A DNA stretch of 63,354 nt, the filler included, from Trichosphaerium sp. ATCC 40318 (taxonomy: Eukaryota > Protista > Tubulinea): the NCBI GenBank assembly GCA_038496445.1. It is 3 parts of 3 records of this genome, joined end to end, with 100 filler letters (N's around TTAATTAATTAA, not from the genome) between each part and the next. Parts side by side here need not be neighbours in the genome. Positions count along the whole stretch, not along the records: positions 49,521 to 63,354 come from JALMLS010000511.1; 2 more parts are not named here. One strand, 5' to 3'. The notes beneath the pieces are model-generated. The model did no database searches, was not told where the DNA came from, and saw only the letters and a program-made list of their open reading frames with translations. The translations under genes and the position numbers were made by a program. This document shows, in pieces, positions 50,046 to 63,131 of this stretch; position 1 is the first letter of the stretch; each line of letters begins with the position of its first letter.

Positions 50046-52205
50046 ATGTACTCAAGTGTATTACTCGGAGTTTTATGCGCACTTTGCTGCGTTTTTGCGT
50101 CCAATGGCGCCCTTATTGAAAATTTGCCTGGTTTGGTACTCAACTAGCTTACTAGCTCAAACTGACGCTCGTGTAGCCTGATATTCCAGCTTTTAAACAG
50201 TATTCTGGTTATATTACAGCAAATGAACAAAGAGACCGCAGATTGTTTTATTGGTACGCTTGCGCACAATATTGAAAACGCCTAACGCTTTTTAAAGGTT
50301 TGCAGAATCTCAAAGCAACCCAGCCAAAGATCCACTTATATTATGGCTTACTGGTGGCCCTGGATGCTCAGGACTCGTTGCAACCCTCGGGGTACGTATT
50401 TTACGCTCAAAGAGGCCTTTTCTCCAACTTTCCATCAAAAACTACCCTTTCCGACTCAAAAACGCTCAATTATACCTAGGAGAACGGTCCGTACACAATG
50501 AACATTGGCGGAGATTCTCTATACGCTAACGAATACTCATGGAATCTAGAAGCAAACGTTATCTGGATTGAATCACCTGGTACGTTTTTAACAACATTCA
50601 AGCGAAGGTTCATGTATTTCAACGTCATGAATTCTTTTCTTGAAATTTACATTGAAAAGTCCATAGTTGGAACTAAGGCAACTTGCTTTTTATGGTTAAA
50701 GGTTCTAATTTTGGAAAAATAGCTGGTGTAGGTTTCTCTACTGTTAGAGATCCTATGGATTATGATGCAAATGATATTAAGACCGGTAACTAAGATTTAA
50801 TCTCTTTTTGTCGCTTCCAACGTTCTAAACAACTTACGTTATCTCTAGCGAATGATACTTACACTTTCTTGTTGAAATTCATTCATGAAGAATTTCCTGA
50901 GTTTGTTGGTCGTGAATTCTGGATTACTGGAGAATCCTATGGAGGTATGATAATTTTTTTTCAACTCATTACTTCGTTGTTTGCTAAAGAAGTTAGGACA
51001 CTACGTACCTGAATTAGCTCTTCGTATTCACGAAGGAAATCTCGAGAACAAAGCGCAAATCAATATTCAAGGATTTTTGGTTGGAAACGCGTGGACTCAT
51101 ATGCCAGTTGATAACACTGCTGCTATTGATTCATGGTACTCTTTTATTATTTATTGAGAATGCACAAATCTAATCTCGATACCCTAAAGGTGGCAACGTG
51201 CTTTGGTACCTGAGAGTACAATTGATGAAATCAAAAAACACTGCAACCTCTCCAACTACGGTAATTATTTCAGATTGTGCTGTTGCTACAAGTAAGCTTC
51301 TAAGCTAATCTACTAGGTCCACTTGTATCCAAGCGTAGCGTCGATAATTCAGCTTGCGATAATGCTGTAGCTAAAGCTAACAAACAAATGGGTGATGTAT
51401 CTGTACGCTATAAATCTTAACTGGAACTGTATGTGCTAATCATTGGTTTAGATTTACGATATTTACGCTGATGTTTGTGTTTTAAATGATGTTGTTGGTG
51501 CATTTGCAAGAGCCGGTTCTCCATTCCACAGCGCTTTGAATAAGGTTGCTAAAACCGAACATGGTCTTGATGCTTGCCTCACTGCTGATATCACAAAATA
51601 CTTAAACGTACGGATACTCACAACAATTTGTTTGTTGATTGCTTAATCCTAACATTCTTTGTTTAATAGACTCCTGCAGTTCAAGAAGCCATACATGCCG
51701 ATCCTACACACTGGGAAGCTTGCTCACAAACGGTATGTTGCTACTGACACATAGTTGGCTTATTTATTATCGATAGGTTCACTACAACTACGAAGATGTT
51801 AAGAAGAGTGTTATTCCTGTATACGAGAAACTCTTTACCACAAATCAACATATTCTTGTATACGCCGGAGATGTTGACGCTATTGTACCATGGCTTGGAA
51901 CACAAAGATGGATCAACAGCATCAATTTGTATGTGGAACCAGTTTTTGTTTTTTTTTGCTGATCTGTTTTTTAGGCACATTAAAGACGAATGGCGTCCAT
52001 GGCATGACAGTGGTAAACAAGTTGGCGGATACGTCACTGTATATGATACAATGACTTTCGCTACTGTCCGTAATGCTGGACATCAAGTACCTTACTTCCA
52101 ACCAGAGAGAGCATACAGTAAGCAACCTATTTATTTCCAATTTGTACTAAGTTATTTTTAGTTATGTTCTCTAACTGGATCAAAAACGCAAGATTTCCAA
52201 ATTAA
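50046..52205 (+). CDS. Serine carboxypeptidase (peptidase S10), multi-exon
   Basis: Signal peptide, [44 protein letters not shown]. Confidence 0.96.
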
Positions 52206-52505
52206 ATTCTTTTAAGTTCTAGCTTGTCTTGTGGAGGTTTAATCAAAAACAATAAACAATACCACACTATCGATGACACCGAGTATTTGTTTCATTGAAA
52301 ATTGAAGTAAGTACTGATACCTTGGTCACTGTTCCGTACTTTCACGTGGAACTACAATGCATGATTTCAAACCTTTTGAACCACTTGAGAGTCTTTCAGA
52401 TTGTGCCAATTGTTATGCTTTGAAATCAGTTCTGGTAACTCAATTGTTACAAACGTACTTAAACCATTTTTTTATTTCTATTCTGGAGTAAAGCCTAAGC
52501 CACAA

Positions 52506-55480
52506 ATGGCTTCTTACGGTGCTACAGTATGGGTAATATTAGCCGCGTACTTGATAGTACTCCTTGGATTAGGCGTAGTTGGCTTCTTTATGAAGCGAAA
52601 CAACTCTCTAGGTAAATGTCGCTATAAATTTATTCCAACTGTCTCTACGCTTACTAAGAGTACCCTTGAGGTGAACATTACATCGTTGGAGGACGAATGA
52701 GCTTTTTTGTATTTTTTTGCACGGCATTCGCCTCGTAAGCAATTTTTATCACGTGGTACAGCCGCTACATCTAACACGTGATTTTTTTGTTTCAAAAAGA
52801 TTTTACTCTGGTTTTACTATTGTCGGTGTACCTGGAGACGCTTATAGAAGAGGTTATCTAGCATTAGTTTGGATGGCTGGGTACTTTAAAAAAAACAACA
52901 AGAAAATTCCGATAGTCGATAATTATTACTTGATAACATATTTCTTTTTGCTTTAGATCAGTTCTATGGACAGCTGGTCCGCTTTTAGCTATTGCTCCTA
53001 GGCTGTATCGTATAGCAAAAGTATGTCGTGGCTTTGTTTTGGGCGTGAATTTGATTGTGGTGGTAGGCAAGGAAGTACATTTCACCGGCTGAGTTTATAC
53101 GTGATAGGTACTTGCAGTCAACAAGACTCTTCTCCTCATTACTGTAGATTCGGTTCACGGTTGCTGAGAACGCTTATAGCTCTGTGTTTACTTGTACCTA
53201 ATATATGCTACATCATTGGACAGTTTAAAGCGATAGGTCAATCCACGGAGGTTCGTAATGACTCTGTACTCTTCTATGAAGTATCCAAATCTCAACGGTT
53301 GAAAGGGACTAAGTAATAACACTGTGGATGGCATTTGGGGAGCTATCGGCTTTGGTGTAGTTATGCTGATATACGAGATGCTGGTGCTCTTGTTGTTTTA
53401 ATTCTTAATACTAAGTTTTGGTTAAGGGTGGAATGCGTTCTGTTGCATGGACTGATATTGTTCAAGTACTGTCACTTAAGTGACTTTTATAGCACTTTAT
53501 GATAACTTTGATAGAAGCTCATAAGTATCCTAGGGTAGCATGATAATGTTTGCGTTTATATCCGTTATTGTGATTGGGGTTGTTCAAGAAGGAGGTGAGA
53601 AAAAAGTTATTAAGCCATTATTTGGTTCATTTACATGTTCAAGGTTTAATTAAGCAAGCAAAGCTATTACCAGAGCATATTCTTGCTGTCCCTGGACCTA
53701 CAGCTAAACTTGCTTGGTACTCTTTCATTATCTTAAACGTTAGGTACCAGTAATACCTACATAGTTATTGTTTAATGTTTGCTTAGTTCAATGATCTACC
53801 CTCATATGCTTCAAAGAATATTTGCAGTACAAAGCGAGAAGAAACTTAAACTTGGAATTTGGATGCTTGTGTTTGTACAAGGATTTGCTTACTTACCCAG
53901 GCACGTGCTTTCTTTTAATTTGAACAAAATATTTCAACAATTAATTGTGGTAAAGAAACTTTACAGTTTATTTCGGTTTTCATGATTGTCGGATTGACTT
54001 CGACTTTATTCGGTTGTACGAAGGTTTTTGACTATTTGTTCAGTATAACTATTGGTATCCTGGGCCGTGTCAGTCATCCTGATTTGAGTGATGATGAATC
54101 TGACCAGATTCTTTCAATTGTCATTGGGTGAGCTTACATATCAATTCAGTAACACAAATCGTTATTTCTGTAACTTATCTCTTCACCTCTAGGGACTTTT
54201 TGCTTAAAGGAGGTTTCTCTAACTTTGTCGCATGTACTTGCTAATTATTGGAGTATATTTCTTATTATCTTTAGCGTTATTATTGGCAAGCTCAGTAGCA
54301 GCAATGTACGTAAAAAGATTTATCAATTTTATTTATGTTTTTGTGAATGGAACATTAACACTCGAGTAGAATGAGCACTACTGATTCTCTTTTAATGTCT
54401 GCAACTTCTATAATAATTATAGATATTATTAAACCATTATGGCCGTCGTCTAAGGAATCTCATCTTCTCATTGCTTCAAAATTTGTGACTGTTTTATTGG
54501 TTGTTGTCGGAATTATCATTGGAGTTTTCATTGAATTTAACTTATATGTCATGTTGCTCTTTGTTGGTAACATACTCATCCAAGCAACTCCAAGCTTTAT
54601 ACTTGTACGTAAAAACGAGTAACCTATACTGAAAAACAACTGAAGAAGCATCAGATCAGCCTGATTTCGTGTTAAACAATTATAGTCAACTTCAGTTTTT
54701 TTTCCTTCAGTGCTTATTTATTCTTTTATGTAGGGGTTGTACTTGGGTTGGATACGTTGGATAAGTTTATTCTGCGGTTGTATAGTAGGTATTGTAATCA
54801 CTGTTATTATGATAATCGCTACTGGTGGTGATAATTTACGTAAGTAATAGAAGTTTACAATAACTTAGTTTGATTTCTTGATTGTAGTTGGTATTGATCC
54901 CGGTGTATATGGATTTACTGCGAATATAATTGTGCTGCTAGCAGTTCAAATTATAAACGATAGATTGCTTAAAAGCCCTAAAGGTCCTCTTACGTTAAGT
55001 ATTGATGTTGACACTATGTTTGGTATGTAGAAAAAAAAAGCCAAACAAAGTAATACCTTTGTTTACTGGATGTCTTGTTTTGTTTGGCTAATTATTTGGG
55101 TTTTAGAGGATGATAAGGATCCTGCACAGTATAACATGTATTGGTTACTATGGTTCCTCCTGTTTATACTATCATTGTCGTTTTTCAGAACACCTGGTGA
55201 ACTTGACAGTATAATTCTTGGATTCCCTGCATGGAGTTTTACTAGTTTGATGATACTTTTTGTTACTGTGGCTGTAGGCGTATCATTCGCCATTTGGTCA
55301 TGGGTGCCATATAACAATAGTGAATATGTAGCTGGTGAAGAAGTTGACCAAGAACGGCACTTGCTTCATGCCACCGAAACAGTGTACGTTAAAGTTTTTA
55401 CTTATTCTCGTTCCTTCGCACGTGTTTGTTTTAATTATTTCTTATTTCTATTAGTACAACATGAGAATAAATTAACTTAG
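52506..55480 (+). CDS. Sodium:solute symporter (SSS/SLC5; PanF/PutP-like) with a C-terminal YhdT-like extension
   Basis: EHYIVGGRM..YSGFTIVGVPGDAYRRG; GGMRSVAWTDIVQG; PHMLQRIFA; AAIMSTTDSLL. 3' end approximate. Confidence 0.92.
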
Positions 55481-55762
55481 TAGTAATTACAAGCGAGTAA
55501 AGTGTCATTAATGGTTTCATAAAGTTACTTAGTAGATTACTGCCAACATCTTTGGAAAAAAAATACATTTGTGTTGGCAACAGATTTTGATTTTATTTAG
55601 TCTATATTTACACCAATGAACTCCAATTACCTTGTACAAGAACCCAAATTGTTTCAGGTGTAAAATGTAGGGATTGAACTTGCTTGGCTGAATACGACAG
55701 GGCAGTAGTGCCTATGTCGAGACGTTACATTATGTTACTACCAACTGTTACAACAGTAGTTG

Positions 55763-57444
55763 TTACTCCCAATCTTTTAAACCAAATAGTTTAAGTCCAA
55801 AATCATCAAGACCAAGTCTATCAACATATGGTCTATATTCAGGAATCTCATCAAGTGTTCTTTTTGCTGTGCGCCTTTCACGAATATAGCATTCATCTTT
55901 TGCAGGAATCATCTTTACAAATTGAATCAATCTCATTTTATTCGAAGTGTTTCCATAGTTAGCGTGTGCTTGTCCTGAATTCCAAATAACCATCTCTCCT
56001 GCACGTAAAGGCACCTATACAAAACGGTAAACACAAAACGGTAAACACAAAGCCAACAAAGAGGAAGCACTGTTAAAAGTACAACAAAATTTCAGAAGGA
56101 CAATATCTTACTCTTTGCGTGTACTGTTGTATTGGGTCTGATGGCGGTACACGTGTTAATATATTCTTATTGTGTGGTTTAATATGTGTATTTCGCCTGA
56201 AAAATCTTGGTTAAGCAAAAACACGTGGTAAAAAAAACTTACCACTTGTTCAAAAACCTTGTTGATCCGGGAACAGTTAGAAATCCACCAACTTCTTCAG
56301 GGCAATCGTCTATCATTTGCAAGTTAATACTTGAATATTCAATTATTAGTTTTCAATGTATGTGCGTACCTAAAGCGATAAGAGCTTGGTATCTTGCGGT
56401 CAAGCCATCTGTAACTTCTTCCATGTACCTTAAAAAAACCGTTATAAATTGGTTCAGAGAATTACTTGGCTATTTCTTACTGCCATGGATTCAAGTCCCA
56501 ATGAAGTTGAAGATTAAATTTCCAGGCGGGTCTCTCTTTTTTAGTTTCTGATCCAACAAAATCAAGGTTCTTTGTTCCTCTCATAACACCCCAATAGTCT
56601 ATAGTTGTCCATAACTTTTTTGTTCCATGAATCTCACAAAAAGTCCGATAAATTGTTTTATTTATTCTATTCTCAAATGCTACCTTATGTAATGCAGGTC
56701 GTCTGAATAAATACTTACTACCCGAAGGCCAGTTCTTTGTTTCCCATGTACAAGGTTTTGAGCGATCAAGCTTGACTTCCTGATGAGAACAAGCATCTTC
56801 ATTGGCTTCTTCAAAAAGTGCTTTTTGAGATTTAACACACTCTTCTTTGTTTAATACTCTTATAACAACAAACCCATACTGCGCTAGAACAGGCAAGTAC
56901 TTTTCTGGTTCTGTTGGTTCAAAAGAAAGCATGTAATCGCCTTTGCGAGGGTACTTTGAAAACATCTTCGAGTGATCAGTGTTTTGCCATATTTCTTGGT
57001 ATGTTCGTTCTTGATTCTGTTTTTTCGATTGCTGGACATTAAGATTTCCGAAAATAGCCTCACGTGAGTATACAAACTGTTTTTCATGCTTTTTACGTAT
57101 AACACGAGCGTCGTTGCTATGTTTGCGTTGTTGTTTTGACGTTTGAGCTTTTTTCCGTTGTTCTAAGTTGAATTTACATAAAAGTATGTCACATTCAAGG
57201 TCGTCTTCGTGCTTGAGCGAAATAAGTAGTTTATAGCGATATAAAGCCAAAAAATGTTATACTTACCTCCCAAGTAGCGTGTTCAACGTCCCAACCTTCC
57301 CACTTTACTAAATACTCTATAGCGCCCTTAAAGGCGTATAAATAGTCAACAAAAAACTATTCTCACTCGTACGGATTTCAACGTTCTTTTATTTAGTACG
57401 CGTTCTGGTATCCAATCGTCAATATCATTTACTGTATTGTCCAT
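55763..57444 (-). CDS. Chromodomain + PhyH-family 2-oxoglutarate/Fe(II) dioxygenase fusion (7 exons)
   Basis: Spliced N-terminus DDWIPERVLNKRTLKSGAIEYLVKWEGWDVEHATWEHEDDLECDILL; then YGFVVI..LHWD..QALIALDD..GGFLTVPGS..AGEMVIWNS..HAN..N.S..R. Confidence 0.9.
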
Positions 57445-58139
57445 ACAATTATTGTTTGTTTGGAGGGAAAATAAAGTTAATAATTCAATGAAACAAACTT
57501 TTTTTTTTCTTTACAGTTTCCTTTTTAAGAGCGTTTTAAAAAACATCTTTCGACTCAGATTAGTCTACACAATTTCCATCCTCTGAAACTAGGTATGTTC
57601 TTCTAACTGAGTATGAGTCTACTAGTACAGTAGCAACATAGAACAAGGATGTAAAGTACTTCACGTGGCGCAAAGAAAATGGCCGTGCTTGCTACATTTT
57701 GATTGGCACAAGAATCCGACTAGCTTCACTGTCACGATTAGTAGTATCTTTTACATAACACTTGCACATGTTGTCAGCACTCCCCAGCAGAAACAAATAG
57801 AAGAAACCGCCTCTTGCTAGTCTGATTTAATTTTCGAAGTAGTTTTTTCGAACTTTTTCGTTTCGAACTTTCCCAGTTGTATTTTTAGGCGTCACTGATA
57901 GTATCCAACTACAATTCTTTCGCACAGAAAACAAAGGTCTGTTGTAAGTCCTGTAGAAGATGCTGACCACCAGACCCCAATCAAATTCATACCAGAGATC
58001 CTTAAATGAAAAGAAATCAAATGAAGCACAAGATAATAAGCACTTACAACTACAAGAAGATACACCGTAAAATTTAGATGCTCCAAATTGAGAAGAATTT
58101 CGTCAATTTTCGAGAAACAGTTGGAATACTATTAAGAAA

Positions 58140-59348
58140 ATGTCGTACTCGCAACACCAACTCTTCTTGGTGGCATTTGTAAGCCTATTATGCCTTTCAA
58201 AGGTATACGCAGATTGTAGCTCGATAGTAGCCCAAGACGGCTCACAATATGATCTATCTGCGCTTATTGGTAAGCTAGTAACCGGATACGGTACTGTAAA
58301 GTGTGACGGTTGCGGTGGAGGAGTAAGTGAACAAAAAAGCGAACATTCCACTTACTACTATTGTAGAAAGATAAATACCAATACCGCGTATCTATATGCA
58401 AAGAATCGAACGTTCTTTGCCAAAATGTGCGTCTTTTGGACACATCTTGCTTTCAATCTGTTTGCTGACCACACCATAGCAATACTTCGCTGGCTGTCAA
58501 GCGTGGGGGCAATATAATGCTCAAGGAGCAATGGTACAGTGACATTTCCAAGGAGGTGTTCCGAAATTTCTCGATATGGAATCGAACTCTGTTGGATTGT
58601 TCTTTCTTCTTCGCTTACTTCATCTAATTGTTTGTTCAGTACTCGATTGGTACAATAGATACAGAACAAGCAATTGGTCTTGATAACAATGGAGGTGTTA
58701 AACTGAGCTACTCTGGTGGTTATCTACACCGAACTTTTGAACGTAAGCGCATAGAAGATAGTCAATTTTGTATCTAACATGATTTGTGTGCTAGTGACAA
58801 TATCTTGCGGAACAGATGGTATTCAGTTTTGGCTTGACACATTTTTTGGCTTCATGCTGATAGTTTTCTTTTAGCATGGACCAATTTCCAAGTCTTTGAT
58901 AATGAAGGGCTTCACTATAGAATGACAGCCTCATCTATCCACGCTTGTAAGACCAATAGCGGCGGCAGCCCCACAAGTGGAGGTGGTGGCGGTGGCGGCA
59001 AAGGAGATGATAACAAAAAAAAAAAAGGATTAAGTATTGGTTCCATTATGCTTATTGTACTCTTGCTTGGTGTCATTGCATACGTAGCTGGTACAGTTAC
59101 TTTCAATATTGTTAGGAAAAATGGAGAGAAAATTCCTCACAAAGTGCGTATCTTGCTCAGTTGTCCAAAAATAAACAAGTGGTATTTACTTTTACCAAAT
59201 AGGACTTCTGGTTCAGCATTCCTGGGCTTTGCAAAGATGGTGCAATGTTTCTAGTCGGACTAGGTATGTTTTTCCGCATTAGCAAGTACGAGAATTCGTT
59301 CTCACTATTTGTTTAGTCACAAAGAGAGATGAATACTCTGAAGTATAA
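58140..59348 (+). CDS. Mannose-6-phosphate receptor/ATG27-like type I membrane protein
   Basis: Signal peptide, YDLSAL, SIHAC, GLSIGSIMLIV TM segment, IPHKDFW..PGLCKDG, terminal YSEV sorting motif. Confidence 0.8.
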
Positions 59349-59690: not shown

Positions 59691-60671
59691 TCAATCCTCT
59701 AGCCATGGTTGAGGTTGACCATCCTCCCCAGCGCGATCTGTATGATCAAGGCCATGTTTAAGCCATTGAAACATTAATTTTGGTGCTATTAATCTGTCTT
59801 CTTTGTTTTTTACAATGTATATTTGATATGCATCTGAGCTCCAATCGCCAATATATTTTATCCATTCATTAGGAACTCCTGCTGCAGCTGCATGTGTTGC
59901 TCCGCCACGCCTGTATGAGTGTCCAGCATATTCTTTAGTATTATTTACCATCTTTGAAACCATTAGTTTGGTCCATTTTACAAATTTAGAGTATGTTATT
60001 TGTGACCACCTTCCGTTGTTCTTGTGTCTAAACAGGGATTTTCCTTGTATGGGTTTGACCTGTTTAATTAGTCTGTTTATCGCTGTTGTAGGGCATAAAG
60101 GGTGACCTTCCATATCCAGAAACGGTATTACGTGTTTTCTCTCACGGAATCGAATTGTTTTTGTTTGTCTAAGTGTAAACCACCAAGTATCACCGTCAAA
60201 CTCTATGTTGGACCTTGATACGTGTCTATCGACACTAAATTCTGCTACTTTACGAGGAACCAAGTTACCTATCCTTAGCATTCCCCAAAATGCCATTAAT
60301 GCTGCTGTCCAATAAACCAGATCCTTGTTTTGTCGCAAATCCACTTTTTTTCTTATGTTCAATAACATCACTGCTGTCATAGGTCGTTTTCTGTCTACTC
60401 TATCTCCTACCTTCCTTCTAAGGCCTCTTAACATATCATGATATAATACACAATTTTCTCTTGGGTCAGCATAACCTAATCTTTTCGAAAGCCATGCCCA
60501 ATGTGAGAAGTATACGCGGATAGTGTCAGGCTTTAACCCCTCTTCCTCTGCTGATTCTTTTGCCCACAATGCTACTACCAGTTGCATGTGTTGAGAGCTC
60601 AAAGGCATCCATTGACTTTGTGGAATATTGAGCTTGAGCAGTGCAATAACTACTGCTTTTATCGCTGACAT
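59691..60671 (-). CDS. Tyrosine recombinase
   Basis: FWGMLRIGNL, KT, LCP, HSYRRGGAT, GDWSSDAYQIY. Confidence 0.95.
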   Translation of the reverse strand: MSAIKAVVIALLKLNIPQSQWMPLSSQHMQLVVALWAKESAEEEGLKPDTIRVYFSHWAWLSKRLGYADPRENCVLYHDMLRGLRRKVGDRVDRKRPMTAVMLLNIRKKVDLRQNKDLVYWTAALMAFWGMLRIGNLVPRKVAEFSVDRHVSRSNIEFDGDTWWFTLRQTKTIRFRERKHVIPFLDMEGHPLCPTTAINRLIKQVKPIQGKSLFRHKNNGRWSQITYSKFVKWTKLMVSKMVNNTKEYAGHSYRRGGATHAAAAGVPNEWIKYIGDWSSDAYQIYIVKNKEDRLIAPKLMFQWLKHGLDHTDRAGEDGQPQPWLED

Positions 60672-60758
60672 TCTATTATTGCTTGTACTTCTGGGATAGG
60701 CCTCTCGCAGGATTCTAATACGTTTGTTTTGTACTTCTGTTAAGAATTCTAAATAAAT

Positions 60759-62340
60759 TTATTTAATAAAACGTCCTGTTACATTAAAAAAGCCTAATTG
60801 ATTTGCTTTGGTATAAAATTGTTGTGTTTGCAGTCTACTTAAAGCGTCAGCAAGGGTATTTTCTTTTGAGGGAATCCAAGTTGCAGTAAGCCGGAATCCG
60901 AATGCTGCCGACCATTTATGCAGATCGTATATCATCTTCATAGCTCTGGAATTGCGCATTACCAGTCTGTTGACTGATGCAACTACTCCTGTATTATCCA
61001 CTAATAAATTGTTGATAAGTTTATTGGCAAATAAGTGTTTCCATTCTTTTATTGCCATCCACACCGCATACATCTCCTTAACATTGATATGCCATTTTTT
61101 TTCTTCTTTTGTAAAGACATGGATAAGCCATGAACCATTTAAAAACGCGCCTGCTGCTATGTTTGAAGCGTCTGTTTGAAACAAACCTTTTGATAATGGT
61201 AACGGACATAGTAAAATTGCCTTACCATTCCATAGGTCCATCATATCATGCCACCACTTTAAGTCTTTTTGCATTGCTGTTGTCTTGTGTACCCACTGTT
61301 CATTATTGCTATAGTGCCTTAAGCCGTCATATATCCTTCTTAGGTATGTATGTCCCCCATATACAACCTGAGCCGCAAAGTTTAATGTACCAGTAAGTTG
61401 TTGCCACTTCCTTAACTTCGCTGACTTCTGCTGAAGAAACCAAACCACCAATTTTTTAATTTTTGTCCTTTTACGCTCTGTTAAAGTAATCGTACGCTTG
61501 GCTGTGTTGATCTCATAGCCCAGAAAGGTGAGGCACTGTGTTGGACCTTGACACTTATCTTTAGACATTTCAAAACCTAAATTTTCTAGTATTTTCATTA
61601 GCGTTTTCATTGCAACTTTAACTTCTTCTTTAGATCTTCCAATAATCAACCAATCGTCGAAGTAAACAACATGAAAGCTAAAGCCTATTGACCGCAAGTA
61701 CCTAGAGATCATGGCCATCAATCTATAAATACTTCTGGCGCTCTATTCCATCCAAAGGGAAGCCTACCATCCTTATATAATATTCCTTTCCATTCAAACG
61801 CTATCAAATCATGATGTTTAGGGTTTACTGGTACCATTCGATATGCTGAAAACATATCCTCTTTACCTAACCATAAGACACTATTACTGTTGTTTCTAAT
61901 AAAGGTTAAAGCTTCTTTTAGAGCTGTTAATGTAAAACTTTGTGGTGTTTCAGATAGATCATTAACTGAAGTCCCAATAGGAAGATTTAAACAAACCACT
62001 TTACGTATCTTATTTCGGAATTGTCCTTTGTCATATATTTTGGGATTGCTGCTATTTTGTTACATTTTCGTACCTTGTTAGCCTTGTAAATCCAGCCTCT
62101 AGACAACTCTAAGTTTATATCTTTGCTTACTAGAGTGCTCCATTGATTGCAAGTTTTAGAATTTTCTACTCTTGTTTCTTTAATCACTGTACCTACTGGA
62201 ACTAAAGAGATACCTATTGTAATCCACACCCGACAACCACACCCAATCCTTATCTTTACTCATTAATGAGGACCATAATTTAACTTTTTTAGACATTAAC
62301 GCTGCTGAGAAAGAGAACGAAAGTTTATTGAGTACAGGCA
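60759..62340 (-). CDS. RT/RNase H polyprotein, broken by frameshifts at ~62035 and ~61722
   Basis: AAIPK, DMFSAYR, LPFGWNRAP, YFDDWL, FLG, TDAS, HINVKE, VDN, NTLADALSR. Start approximate. Confidence 0.9.
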
Positions 62341-62343
62341 ACG

Positions 62344-63131
62344 TTAATTTTGATTGTCACCTTCTTTGATTAGGACAGGTATTATGCAATGCCCTTTTAT
62401 ACCACAACTGAAGCACACATGCTTTAGGTAACATCCATTTGGGCGTCTGGAGAAGCGACAGTTATCACTACTCAATGAATTCGCTTGAATACAGGCCAGG
62501 TGATCATTGGTGATGTTCCAAGGGTTGTTTCTGCTACCAACTTGAGCATCGATCACTTCTTGCTTGGTGAGTGGAGGGCGTCTAGGTTGCTGTTGCCGTC
62601 TTGGCCTTGGTGGACCTCTAGGTTGATTGTTGGGTTGTTGAACCGGCCCTAGGTACATGTTAAAGTACAACTGAGGAACCAAGTATGGAGAATCAGATCG
62701 TTCCCAGAATTTTCTTACTGCACGATCAAAAATGAGTACCTGCTGCTGCGTATACATTGACAAGGGGCTAGCACTTGGTTGTGGTATCTTTGATAGTGCT
62801 CTAACATAGTCTTCGAAATAAGACTGTTGGTCATATCTACGTTTGCTTGGCGGAGGATCAAACGAAGACGCATAATCAGATCTGCGTCGCTGGTTATCGG
62901 AATGGCTTTGGAGGGCCTGTGTGAAAGCACTGGTGAGCTATCAAAGACATTAAAAGACTGTACAAACTCTGGAAAATAAACTGGGTTTTTTATACCAAAA
63001 CGCGTAATTCCACAAATCAAAGGAGAGTTGGTGAAAGTTTTTCGAAGTGCTGCTGCCTCTTCGGCACTTACCGCAGTGAAATCTGAGGGCATAATACCCT
63101 GAACCAATGGTGTAGGCGTTGTTTTTGCCAT
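62344..63131 (-). CDS. Gag-like protein with C-terminal Cys/His knuckles, frameshifted
   Basis: C..C..C.L.H then CFSCGIKGHC; restoring one A gives CX2CX4HX4C; frame break at ~62760. Confidence 0.7.

What the first reader, a model, noticed from the sequence alone, without database searches (positions are those of the whole stretch)
55763..57444. Chromodomain fused to a PhyH-clade 2OG/Fe(II) dioxygenase: candidate non-JmjC chromatin oxygenase
Seen: two small 5' exons missed by the ORF track splice in frame onto exon 3 to give a canonical chromodomain (W-I-P-E-R-V-L-N-K-R..EYLVKWEGWD...TWEHEDDL.C). All three aromatic-cage positions are Trp. A basic linker (RKK..RKH..RKK, NLS-like) follows, then a complete dioxygenase with HWD, a distal His (AHAN) and the Arg expected to bind 2OG; no lesions seen. 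Established: chromodomain cages read methyl-lysine, and known chromatin 2OG oxygenases are JmjC, TET/JBP and AlkB types, while PhyH enzymes are known for small-molecule substrates. Inference: a methyl-histone-targeted hydroxylase/demethylase or base-modifying enzyme from a clade not known to me to act on chromatin.
Basis: partly seen in the sequence, partly recalled or inferred. Interest (0 to 1): 0.88.

Follow-up and report, generated by a model that had tools for sequence, protein, structure and literature searches.

The report
Chromodomain fused to PhyH-type oxygenase
An amoeba-like eukaryote has an intact seven-exon gene that joins an HP1-type methyl-lysine reader (chromodomain) to an apparently active oxygenase of the PhyH/Gig2 class. 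I found this combination in no relative and no paper, so it may be a new kind of chromatin-directed oxygenase, but splicing and function have not been tested.

Summary
On the minus strand, 57444..55763 reads as a clean seven-exon GT-AG gene of 441 aa.

- **Chromodomain.** Exons 1-3 rebuild a full chromodomain (Pfam Chromo 54.9 bits, E 8e-15). The best solved match is the HP1alpha/CBX5 chromodomain. All three cage positions are Trp (W11, W33, W36).
- **Linker.** A 53-residue basic stretch follows (pI 10.8).
- **Oxygenase.** Residues 104-441 match a profile of 30 homologues end to end (415 bits). H281-x-D283, H375 and R386 are intact. They align with family columns conserved in over 90% of sequences.
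- **Splicing of exons 3-7.** This is supported by a transcript-derived homologue from Trichosphaerium (56% identity, no gaps at the joints).
- **Family.** The catalytic domain is PhyH-superfamily. Its nearest structures are Gig2/DUF1479 and YbiU, both of unknown function.
- **Rarity.** No chromodomain occurs in 150 representative homologues, 24 further hits or 22 metagenome loci, and no paper describes the fusion.

There is no RNA evidence for the exon 1-3 joints. However, no ATG start other than the one in exon 1 can produce the conserved N-terminal part of the enzyme.

Chromatin targeting is a reasonable inference from the architecture. The substrate (histone, DNA or a small molecule) is unknown.

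Verdict: a real, apparently unique architecture. It is a new variant of reader-oxygenase fusions and is moderately to highly interesting.

The parts
57373..57444 (-). Exon 1 (aa 1-24). It holds the ATG at 57444, the acidic DIDD stretch, cage Trp W11 (57414-57412) and the first chromodomain strand WIPERVLNKR.
   Evidence: An in-frame stop lies 21 codons upstream with no other ATG between. The donor is GTACGA.
57267..57326 (-). Exon 2 (aa 25-44). This is the chromodomain core GAIEYLVKWEGWDVEHATWE, with cage Trp W33 (57302-57300) and W36 (57293-57291).
56481..57211 (-). Exon 3 (aa 45-288). It runs from the C-terminal chromodomain helix (HEDDLECDILLCKF) through the basic linker (aa 59-111, 57169-57011) into the N-terminal half of the oxygenase. 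It includes the metal ligands H281-W-D283 (56503-56495).
   Evidence: A single open frame physically links the end of the chromodomain to the oxygenase. It aligns with P0001 at 56% identity.
56370..56428 (-). Exon 4 (oxygenase, YMEEVTDGLTARYQALIAL).
   Evidence: The junctions are supported by the gap-free alignment to transcript-derived P0001 and by the family profile.
56243..56309 (-). Exon 5 (oxygenase, the DCPEEVGGFLTVPGS motif).
56112..56196 (-). Exon 6 (oxygenase).
55763..56014 (-). Exon 7. It holds the distal ligand H375 (55966-55964, AHAN), the predicted 2OG-binding R386 (55933-55931), the C-terminal helices and the TAA stop (55765-55763).
   Evidence: (a weak PhyH hit on this piece alone).

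Best explanation
This is one intact nuclear-type gene of an amoebozoan-like eukaryote. It encodes a 441-aa protein with three parts.

1. An N-terminal HP1-type chromodomain with a complete aromatic cage (W11, W33, W36).
2. A lysine/arginine-rich linker.
3. A C-terminal Fe(II)/2-oxoglutarate oxygenase of the PhyH superfamily, from the Gig2/YbiU-like branch, with a full H-x-D...H triad and the 2OG-binding Arg.

Proposed mechanism: the chromodomain docks on a methylated lysine of a histone tail (an H3K9me- or H3K27me-like ARKS context). The basic linker helps nuclear import and/or DNA contact. The tethered oxygenase then uses O2 and 2OG to hydroxylate a substrate held close by on marked chromatin.

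Shown here: the gene structure, both domains, the intact catalytic residues, and that the chromodomain is a lineage-specific addition to a family that otherwise lacks it.

Inferred: that exons 1-2 are actually spliced to exon 3, that the chromodomain binds methyl-lysine, that the protein is nuclear, and what the substrate is.

My odds: about 0.85 that this is a real fusion gene, about 0.45 that it acts on chromatin, and at most 0.3 that it modifies histone or DNA itself.
For: Gene model. Seven in-frame GT-AG exons, 441 aa, no lesions.

Chromodomain. Pfam Chromo 54.9 bits, E 8.2e-15. The CBX5/HP1 chromodomain is the best solved match, E 4e-13, and the alignment runs through all three exon-derived parts and the cage positions.

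Evidence for the fusion.
- The last 14 chromodomain residues lie in the same exon and frame as the oxygenase.
- The frame holds no ATG between the stop upstream of 57250 and M127. M127 lies inside the conserved RTxEEW...F-x-x-YP motif.
- So a protein with the conserved N-terminal part of the enzyme must start in an upstream exon.
- The 80 codons upstream of the region homologous to P0001 stay open, with P about 0.01 by chance.

Oxygenase.
- 56% identity to Trichosphaerium transcript P0001 over 322 aa, E 2e-125, with no gaps at the exon joints.
- 415 bits against the family profile, covering nodes 11-357 of 361.
- Triad and Arg are conserved.
- P0001 matches PhyH PF05721 at 34 bits against a cut-off of 22.
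- The AF2 model of P0001 has pLDDT 92.8.

Hints that the family uses targeting modules. Relatives carry other N-terminal or fused modules:
- D123/R2K ATP-grasp, MJ1316 RNA-end domain, ankyrin, NIF phosphatase and TPR.
- K/R-rich tails, and myristoylation-like MG starts in more distant members.

Phylogeny. The window protein is sister to chromo-less P0001 (SH-aLRT 93) inside a chromo-less clade.
Against: - There is no transcript evidence. The only public runs holding any of the gene have a 213-nt contig inside exon 3.
- This is a single instance. No second genome shows the fusion, so conservation of the architecture cannot be shown.
- Every characterised structural neighbour acts on small molecules, and the two closest (Gig2, YbiU) have no known function.
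- One bacterial relative sits beside a PLP-dependent enzyme gene in two contigs, a weak hint of amino-acid-type chemistry.
- The full-length spliced protein could not be passed to Pfam or the structure tools because it has no reference. PhyH membership of the window protein itself therefore rests on its homologues.
Confidence: 0.5

Rival explanations
1. A CDYL-like arrangement. The chromodomain tethers an enzyme that still acts on a small molecule, such as an acyl-CoA, amino acid or other metabolite. It would change a local metabolite pool, or consume 2OG and make succinate at marked chromatin, rather than oxidise histone or DNA directly.
For: All characterised relatives by sequence and fold are small-molecule oxygenases: SnoK, EctD, SptF, PtlH, KanJ, PHYHD1 and PHYH. 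A bacterial homologue lies next to a PLP-dependent enzyme gene in two contigs. CDY/CDYL chromodomains are among the solved matches. From my own knowledge, CDYL is a precedent for a chromodomain joined to a CoA-ester enzyme fold.
Against: Family members fused to D123 ATP-grasp, MJ1316, NIF phosphatase and ankyrin modules point toward macromolecular partners. The family is only 11-16% identical to the small-molecule enzymes and carries extra conserved Trp/Arg elements.
Confidence: 0.2
2. The chromodomain works as a non-histone adaptor. It would read a methyl-lysine or a basic motif on a non-chromatin protein, for example in the translation or RNA machinery, and the enzyme would be a protein or RNA hydroxylase acting outside chromatin.
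For: Fusion partners elsewhere in the family relate to translation or RNA: D123/Cdc123-type ATP-grasp (P0137, P0144), the MJ1316 RNA cyclic-end domain (P0035), and one Tma16 hit. cpSRP43 chromodomains also appear among the matches; from my own knowledge these bind non-histone partners.
Against: The domain is closest to HP1/CBX histone readers and keeps the full cage and the TWE motif. The basic linker fits a nuclear protein.
Confidence: 0.15
3. A gene-model artefact, or a very recent and possibly non-functional exon shuffle. In this reading the chromodomain exons are not, or only rarely, spliced to the oxygenase, which is made without them.
For: No RNA evidence exists for the joints. The architecture is seen only once. 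A DIRS-like retroelement lies 2 kb away, showing local genome flux. The exon 1 donor is GTACGA rather than GTAAGT.
Against: - The end of the chromodomain is in the same exon and frame as the enzyme.
- No alternative ATG can produce the conserved N-terminal enzyme segment.
- All phases fit and both domains are lesion-free.
- The same GTACG-type donor is used at intron 4, whose splicing is supported by homology.
- The region upstream of the ATG is intergenic, next to a divergent gene.
Confidence: 0.1

Closest known systems
HP1/CBX chromodomain readers (CBX5/HP1alpha; Polycomb CBX2/4/6/7/8)
   Same: The N-terminal domain aligns over its whole length with CBX5 (E 4e-13). It has the three cage positions, the TWE motif and the C-terminal helix. 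It passes the Pfam Chromo cut-off.
   Different: There is no chromoshadow domain or Pc box. The first cage residue is Trp, where the matched HP1alpha has Tyr. The domain is attached to an enzyme.
Gig2/DUF1479 (Candida GIG2, 6akz) and YbiU (4rgk), within the PhyH superfamily (PF05721 clan)
   Different: Identity is only 14-15%. Their function is unknown. Neither carries a reader domain. The window's family forms its own clade with conserved RTxEEW..FPRYP, TWExxNWP and MRGT motifs.
JmjC histone demethylases with reader domains (for example KDM4/JMJD2 with Tudor, PHD or chromo; JMJD6 with sporadic chromo fusions)
   Same: The logic is the same: a methyl-lysine reader joined to an Fe(II)/2OG oxygenase. 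Chromo fusions to JmjC families are recorded in PMC2938197.
   Different: The catalytic domain here is not JmjC. No JmjC structure appears among the best 50 fold matches, which are PhyH-type and then prolyl-hydroxylase-type.
CDY/CDYL (chromodomain plus crotonase-fold CoA enzyme)
   Same: An N-terminal chromodomain joined to a catalytic fold otherwise used in acyl-CoA or small-molecule metabolism. CDY/CDYL chromodomains are among the solved matches.
   Different: The enzyme fold and chemistry differ (a crotonase hydratase against a 2OG oxygenase). This is an analogy from my own knowledge and was not tested here.

Membership tests
Chromo domain (Pfam PF00385) | Profile score above Pfam's gathering cut-off. 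| tested here: met
   54.9 bits against a cut-off of 25.1, E 8.2e-15, on the spliced 59-aa stretch.
Chromo domain (Pfam PF00385) | Three aromatic cage residues at the positions that hold methyl-lysine in HP1/Pc readers. | tested here: met
   In the alignment to CBX5, W11, W33 and W36 sit opposite Y, W and F. That these are the cage positions is my own knowledge of HP1 structures.
Chromo domain (Pfam PF00385) | Binding of methylated lysine peptides. | not testable with these tools
   Needs peptide arrays, ITC or similar.
PhyH superfamily (Pfam PF05721) | Profile score above the gathering cut-off. | tested here: inconclusive
   The window protein could be scanned only as exon pieces. Exon 7 scores 13.4 bits, below the cut-off of 22. 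Its 56%-identical homologue P0001 scores 34.1 bits, and 85 of 150 family members pass E 0.001. The full spliced protein has no reference and was not scanned.
PhyH superfamily (Pfam PF05721) | Double-stranded beta-helix fold closest to PhyH-type structures. | tested here: met
   The AF2 model of homologue P0001 has pLDDT 92.8. Top matches are Gig2, YbiU, TlxI, AsqJ, AusE, EasH, SnoK, KanJ, PHYHD1 and PHYH. This was tested on the homologue, not on the window protein itself.
Fe(II)/2OG oxygenase (catalytically competent) | HxD/E...H metal triad and a basic residue for the 2OG C5 carboxylate. | tested here: met
   H281, D283, H375 and R386 are present and align with family columns conserved in 90-97% of sequences.
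JmjC / TET-JBP / AlkB chromatin oxygenases | Catalytic domain belonging to one of these families. | tested here: not met
   No Pfam hit to these families. None appears in the best 50 structural matches.

The most novel reading that the evidence does not exclude
A chromodomain-guided PhyH/Gig2-class Fe(II)/2OG oxygenase directly hydroxylates or demethylates histones, or oxidises DNA or RNA bases, in methyl-lysine-marked chromatin. That would be a fourth, independent recruitment of the 2OG oxygenase fold to chromatin, beside JmjC, TET/JBP and AlkB. It would also give a first functional handle on the uncharacterised Gig2/YbiU-like branch.
Probability: 0.27. Interest if true: 0.85.

Novelty: new variant of a known kind. 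Interest (0 to 1): 0.62.

Why it matters
Fusions of a reader domain to an enzyme are among the most reliable sequence-only clues to chromatin function. All known chromatin-directed 2OG oxygenases come from the JmjC, TET/JBP and AlkB lineages.

A PhyH/Gig2-class enzyme tied to an HP1-type reader would suggest that this large class can also be directed to chromatin. Its characterised members are small-molecule enzymes.

It would also give a concrete, testable entry point into a widespread protist family. That family's closest structural relatives, Gig2/DUF1479 and YbiU, still have no known function.

If the enzyme instead acts on a metabolite, it would be a second example, after CDYL, of local metabolism tethered to marked chromatin.

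Tried and rejected
- **RNA evidence.** The one run search found two runs from a single sample. They hold only a 213-nt contig inside exon 3, so no junction could be tested.
- **The window's own protein.** It is not in the protein collection, even when the query length allowed 441-aa candidates. I therefore had no reference for the spliced protein. I did not type it into Pfam, structure or atlas tools. Instead I used exon pieces, a typed 59-aa chromodomain, local HMMER and BLAST, and the 56%-identical P0001 as a stand-in for structure.
- **ESM Atlas by features.** Uninformative.
- **Metagenome scans.** The scan for close relatives found none. An alignment of 30 sequences was too diverse to search with. 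A closer alignment gave 22 loci, none with chromodomain coding. Many of these have short upstream flanks, so this is a weak negative.
- **Bacterial gene neighbourhoods of two homologues.** They gave no clear functional signal: kinases and a transposase in one, a PLP-dependent enzyme gene in the other.
- **Literature.** No paper on chromo-PhyH fusions was found. YbiU and DUF1479 remain uncharacterised. The CDC123 ATP-grasp paper does not mention dioxygenase fusions.
- **Rejected: a retrotransposon (chromovirus-type) origin of the chromodomain.** The best matches are cellular HP1/CBX readers with a complete cage. The nearby retroelement is DIRS-like, with a tyrosine recombinase.
- **Rejected: a JmjC, TET or AlkB identity for the enzyme**.

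Full report
**1. What is in the sequence**

The gene lies on the minus strand. Reading 57600..55600 and joining exons at GT-AG sites gives a seven-exon CDS:

| Exon | Coordinates |
|---|---|
| 1 | 57444-57373 |
| 2 | 57326-57267 |
| 3 | 57211-56481 |
| 4 | 56428-56370 |
| 5 | 56309-56243 |
| 6 | 56196-56112 |
| 7 | 56014-55763 |

- The CDS is 1326 nt and encodes 441 aa. The introns are 46, 55, 52, 60, 46 and 97 nt.
- An in-frame stop lies 21 codons upstream of the ATG, with no other ATG between.
- The piece has 37.8% G+C.
- The gene's flanks are short. A convergent plus-strand gene ends near 55480, and a divergent ATG27-like gene starts at 58140.

**2. The chromodomain**

- The spliced stretch from exons 1-3 (59 aa, typed in) scores 54.9 bits, E 8.2e-15, against Pfam Chromo (cut-off 25.1).
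- Against solved structures the best matches are the CBX5/HP1alpha chromodomain (E 4e-13), then CBX1, CBX6, CBX8, CBX2, CBX4, Drosophila HP1, CDYL and CHD1.
- The alignment to CBX5 runs from the acidic residues before the first strand to the end of the C-terminal helix.
- It places W11, W33 and W36 opposite the HP1alpha Y, W and F. From my own knowledge of HP1 structures, those form the methyl-lysine cage. The TWE motif is retained.
- As a control for chance, tblastn with this domain gives three collinear hits in the piece (E 6e-23). It gives nothing better than E 0.76 in 22 unrelated loci that encode relatives of the enzyme.

**3. Is the chromodomain part of the same protein as the enzyme?**

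There is no RNA evidence. The single run search returned two runs of one sample, which hold only a 213-nt contig inside exon 3. The case therefore rests on the sequence itself.

- (a) The last 14 residues of the chromodomain (HEDDLECDILLCKF) lie in exon 3. They are in the same open frame as the linker and the enzyme.
- (b) That frame has no ATG between the stop upstream of 57250 and M127. M127 lies inside the family's conserved RTxEEW...F-x-x-YP motif. A protein with the conserved N-terminal part of the enzyme must therefore start in an upstream exon.
- (c) The 80 codons upstream of the region homologous to P0001 stay open. At the piece's stop-codon frequency of 0.056 per codon, that has P about 0.01 by chance.
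- (d) The unusual GTACG-type donor of intron 1 recurs at intron 4, whose splicing is supported by homology.

I put the fusion at about 0.85.

**4. The oxygenase**

- *Closest relative.* Exon 3 finds one close relative through the word index. This is P0001, a complete 367-aa ORF from the MMETSP0405 transcriptome of Trichosphaerium sp. ATCC 40318, an amoebozoan.
- *Alignment.* The spliced model aligns with P0001 over 322 residues at 56% identity, E 2e-125. There are no gaps at any exon joint, which supports the splicing of exons 3-7.
- *Wider family.* An exhaustive HMMER search of 1.84 billion representatives found 271 relatives with E up to 0.001, and 102 with E up to 1e-10.
- *Profile match.* A profile of 30 of these matches residues 104-441 of the window protein end to end, at 415 bits.
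- *Catalytic residues.* The metal ligands and the Arg predicted to bind 2OG are H281, D283, H375 and R386. They fall in columns conserved 135/140, 124/137, 94/97 and 97/100.
- *Verdict.* 'Complete, no lesions' is correct.

**5. Which family**

- P0001 passes the Pfam PhyH cut-off (34.1 against 22 bits). Of the 150 relatives scanned, 85 match PhyH.
- The family profile's best solved hits are SnoK (3e-11), DhiD, EctD and SptF.
- An AF2 model of P0001 built with 150 homologues is confident (pLDDT 92.8, pTM 0.90).
- Foldseek puts PtlH, SptF, KanJ, TlxI and PHYHD1 first, at 11-16% identity.
- GIG2/DUF1479 and YbiU have no established function in the papers I could search.
- 'PhyH clade' is therefore right. 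More precisely, it is a separate, mostly protist clade nearest to the Gig2/YbiU branch.
- These structural tests were done on the homologue. The full window protein has no reference and was not typed in.

**6. How unusual the architecture is**

- None of the 150 best representatives has a Chromo match.
- None of the 24 hits of a profile search with precomputed Pfam has one.
- None of the 22 metagenome loci has chromodomain coding in the flanks. Many of those flanks are short.
- In a quick maximum-likelihood tree, the window protein is sister to chromo-less P0001 (SH-aLRT 93) inside a chromo-less clade. The chromodomain is therefore a lineage-specific addition.
- Named relatives come from Trichosphaerium, Nematostelium, Balamuthia, Phalansterium, Arcella, the foraminifer Reticulomyxa and the planctomycete Uabimicrobium. 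This is why I call the source amoebozoan-like. The organism itself was not identified.
- No paper in the library joins chromodomain and PhyH in one protein. Chromo fusions to JmjC families are on record (PMC2938197).

**7. What it most likely does**

The family seems to accept targeting modules. Relatives carry:

- D123/R2K ATP-grasp (P0137, P0144);
- the MJ1316 RNA cyclic-end domain (P0035);
- ankyrin repeats (P0082);
- a NIF/HAD phosphatase (P0101);
- TPR (P0078);
- K/R-rich N-terminal tails in the closest clade;
- myristoylation-like MGxxxS starts in a more distant clade.

This pattern fits an enzyme that is brought to different cellular sites. Here the site would be methyl-lysine-marked chromatin.

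That the protein is targeted to chromatin is my best reading, at about 0.45. That it oxidises histone or nucleic acid directly is less likely, at most 0.3. Every characterised neighbour acts on a small molecule. One bacterial relative sits beside a PLP-dependent enzyme gene.

The rivals are:

- a CDYL-like chromatin-tethered metabolic enzyme (0.2);
- a hydroxylase guided to a non-histone methylated or basic partner, perhaps in translation or RNA handling (0.15);
- an unspliced or non-functional recent shuffle (0.1).

**8. Verdict**

The architecture is real on the DNA and apparently undescribed, but the splicing of exons 1-3 and the function are untested.
- I rate it a new variant of a known kind, namely reader-oxygenase fusions. 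Interest is about 0.6, higher if a chromatin substrate is shown.

Noticed in passing
window 59694-63131 (-): A DIRS-like retroelement lies 2 kb upstream of the gene. It has a tyrosine recombinase ORF (59694-60671, Phage_integrase E 1e-5) and an RT plus RNase H ORF (60762-61721, RVT_1 E 2e-9). Three further ORFs (61721-61999, 62347-62763, 62718-63131) have no Pfam match. The RT reading frame is split between two ORFs, so the copy may be damaged.
   Followed up: partly
proteins P0137, P0144, P0035, P0101, P0082 (homologues, not in the window): Other members of this PhyH/Gig2-like family are fused to a D123/Cdc123-type R2K ATP-grasp, an MJ1316 RNA cyclic-end recognition domain (Reticulomyxa), a NIF/HAD phosphatase and ankyrin repeats. 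I found none of these fusions described. The CDC123 ATP-grasp paper has no mention of a dioxygenase fusion.
   Followed up: partly
alignment A1, N-termini: The closest clade shares an acidic-aromatic start (for example MEEENFFFD..., MEFDDDAF...). This is followed by a K/R-rich stretch and the motif RTxEEWxxxFPRYP. A more distant clade starts with MGxxxS, which looks like an N-myristoylation signal. So the family seems to be sent to different cellular sites.
   Followed up: no
P0003 (Uabimicrobium amorphum, L023 6001-7194): A phagocytic planctomycete carries a 44%-identical homologue of this otherwise mostly protist family. It sits next to a DDE transposase and Ser/Thr kinase genes. This may be transfer between domains; the direction was not tested.
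   Followed up: partly
P0005, P0151, P0152 (Balamuthia mandrillaris, NCBI KAL6078392.1 and variants): The Balamuthia homologues of this oxygenase are named 'Sodium channel protein type 8 subunit alpha' in their record. That looks like an annotation error.
   Followed up: no
window 58140-59251 (+), 51796-52158 (+), 52401-55480 (+): Three neighbouring genes were seen. An ATG27-like gene with a signal-peptide-like start is transcribed divergently from the finding. The C-terminal exon of an S10 serine carboxypeptidase scores E 2e-12. A multi-exon gene rich in hydrophobic segments (membrane protein?) ends convergently about 280 bp from the finding's stop codon.
   Followed up: partly
window 56820-57032: The only public-run match is a 213-nt contig in two runs of one sample (2022). 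It differs by three letters, including G>A at 56999. It probably comes from a related strain or species, and the kind of run is not on record.
   Followed up: yes
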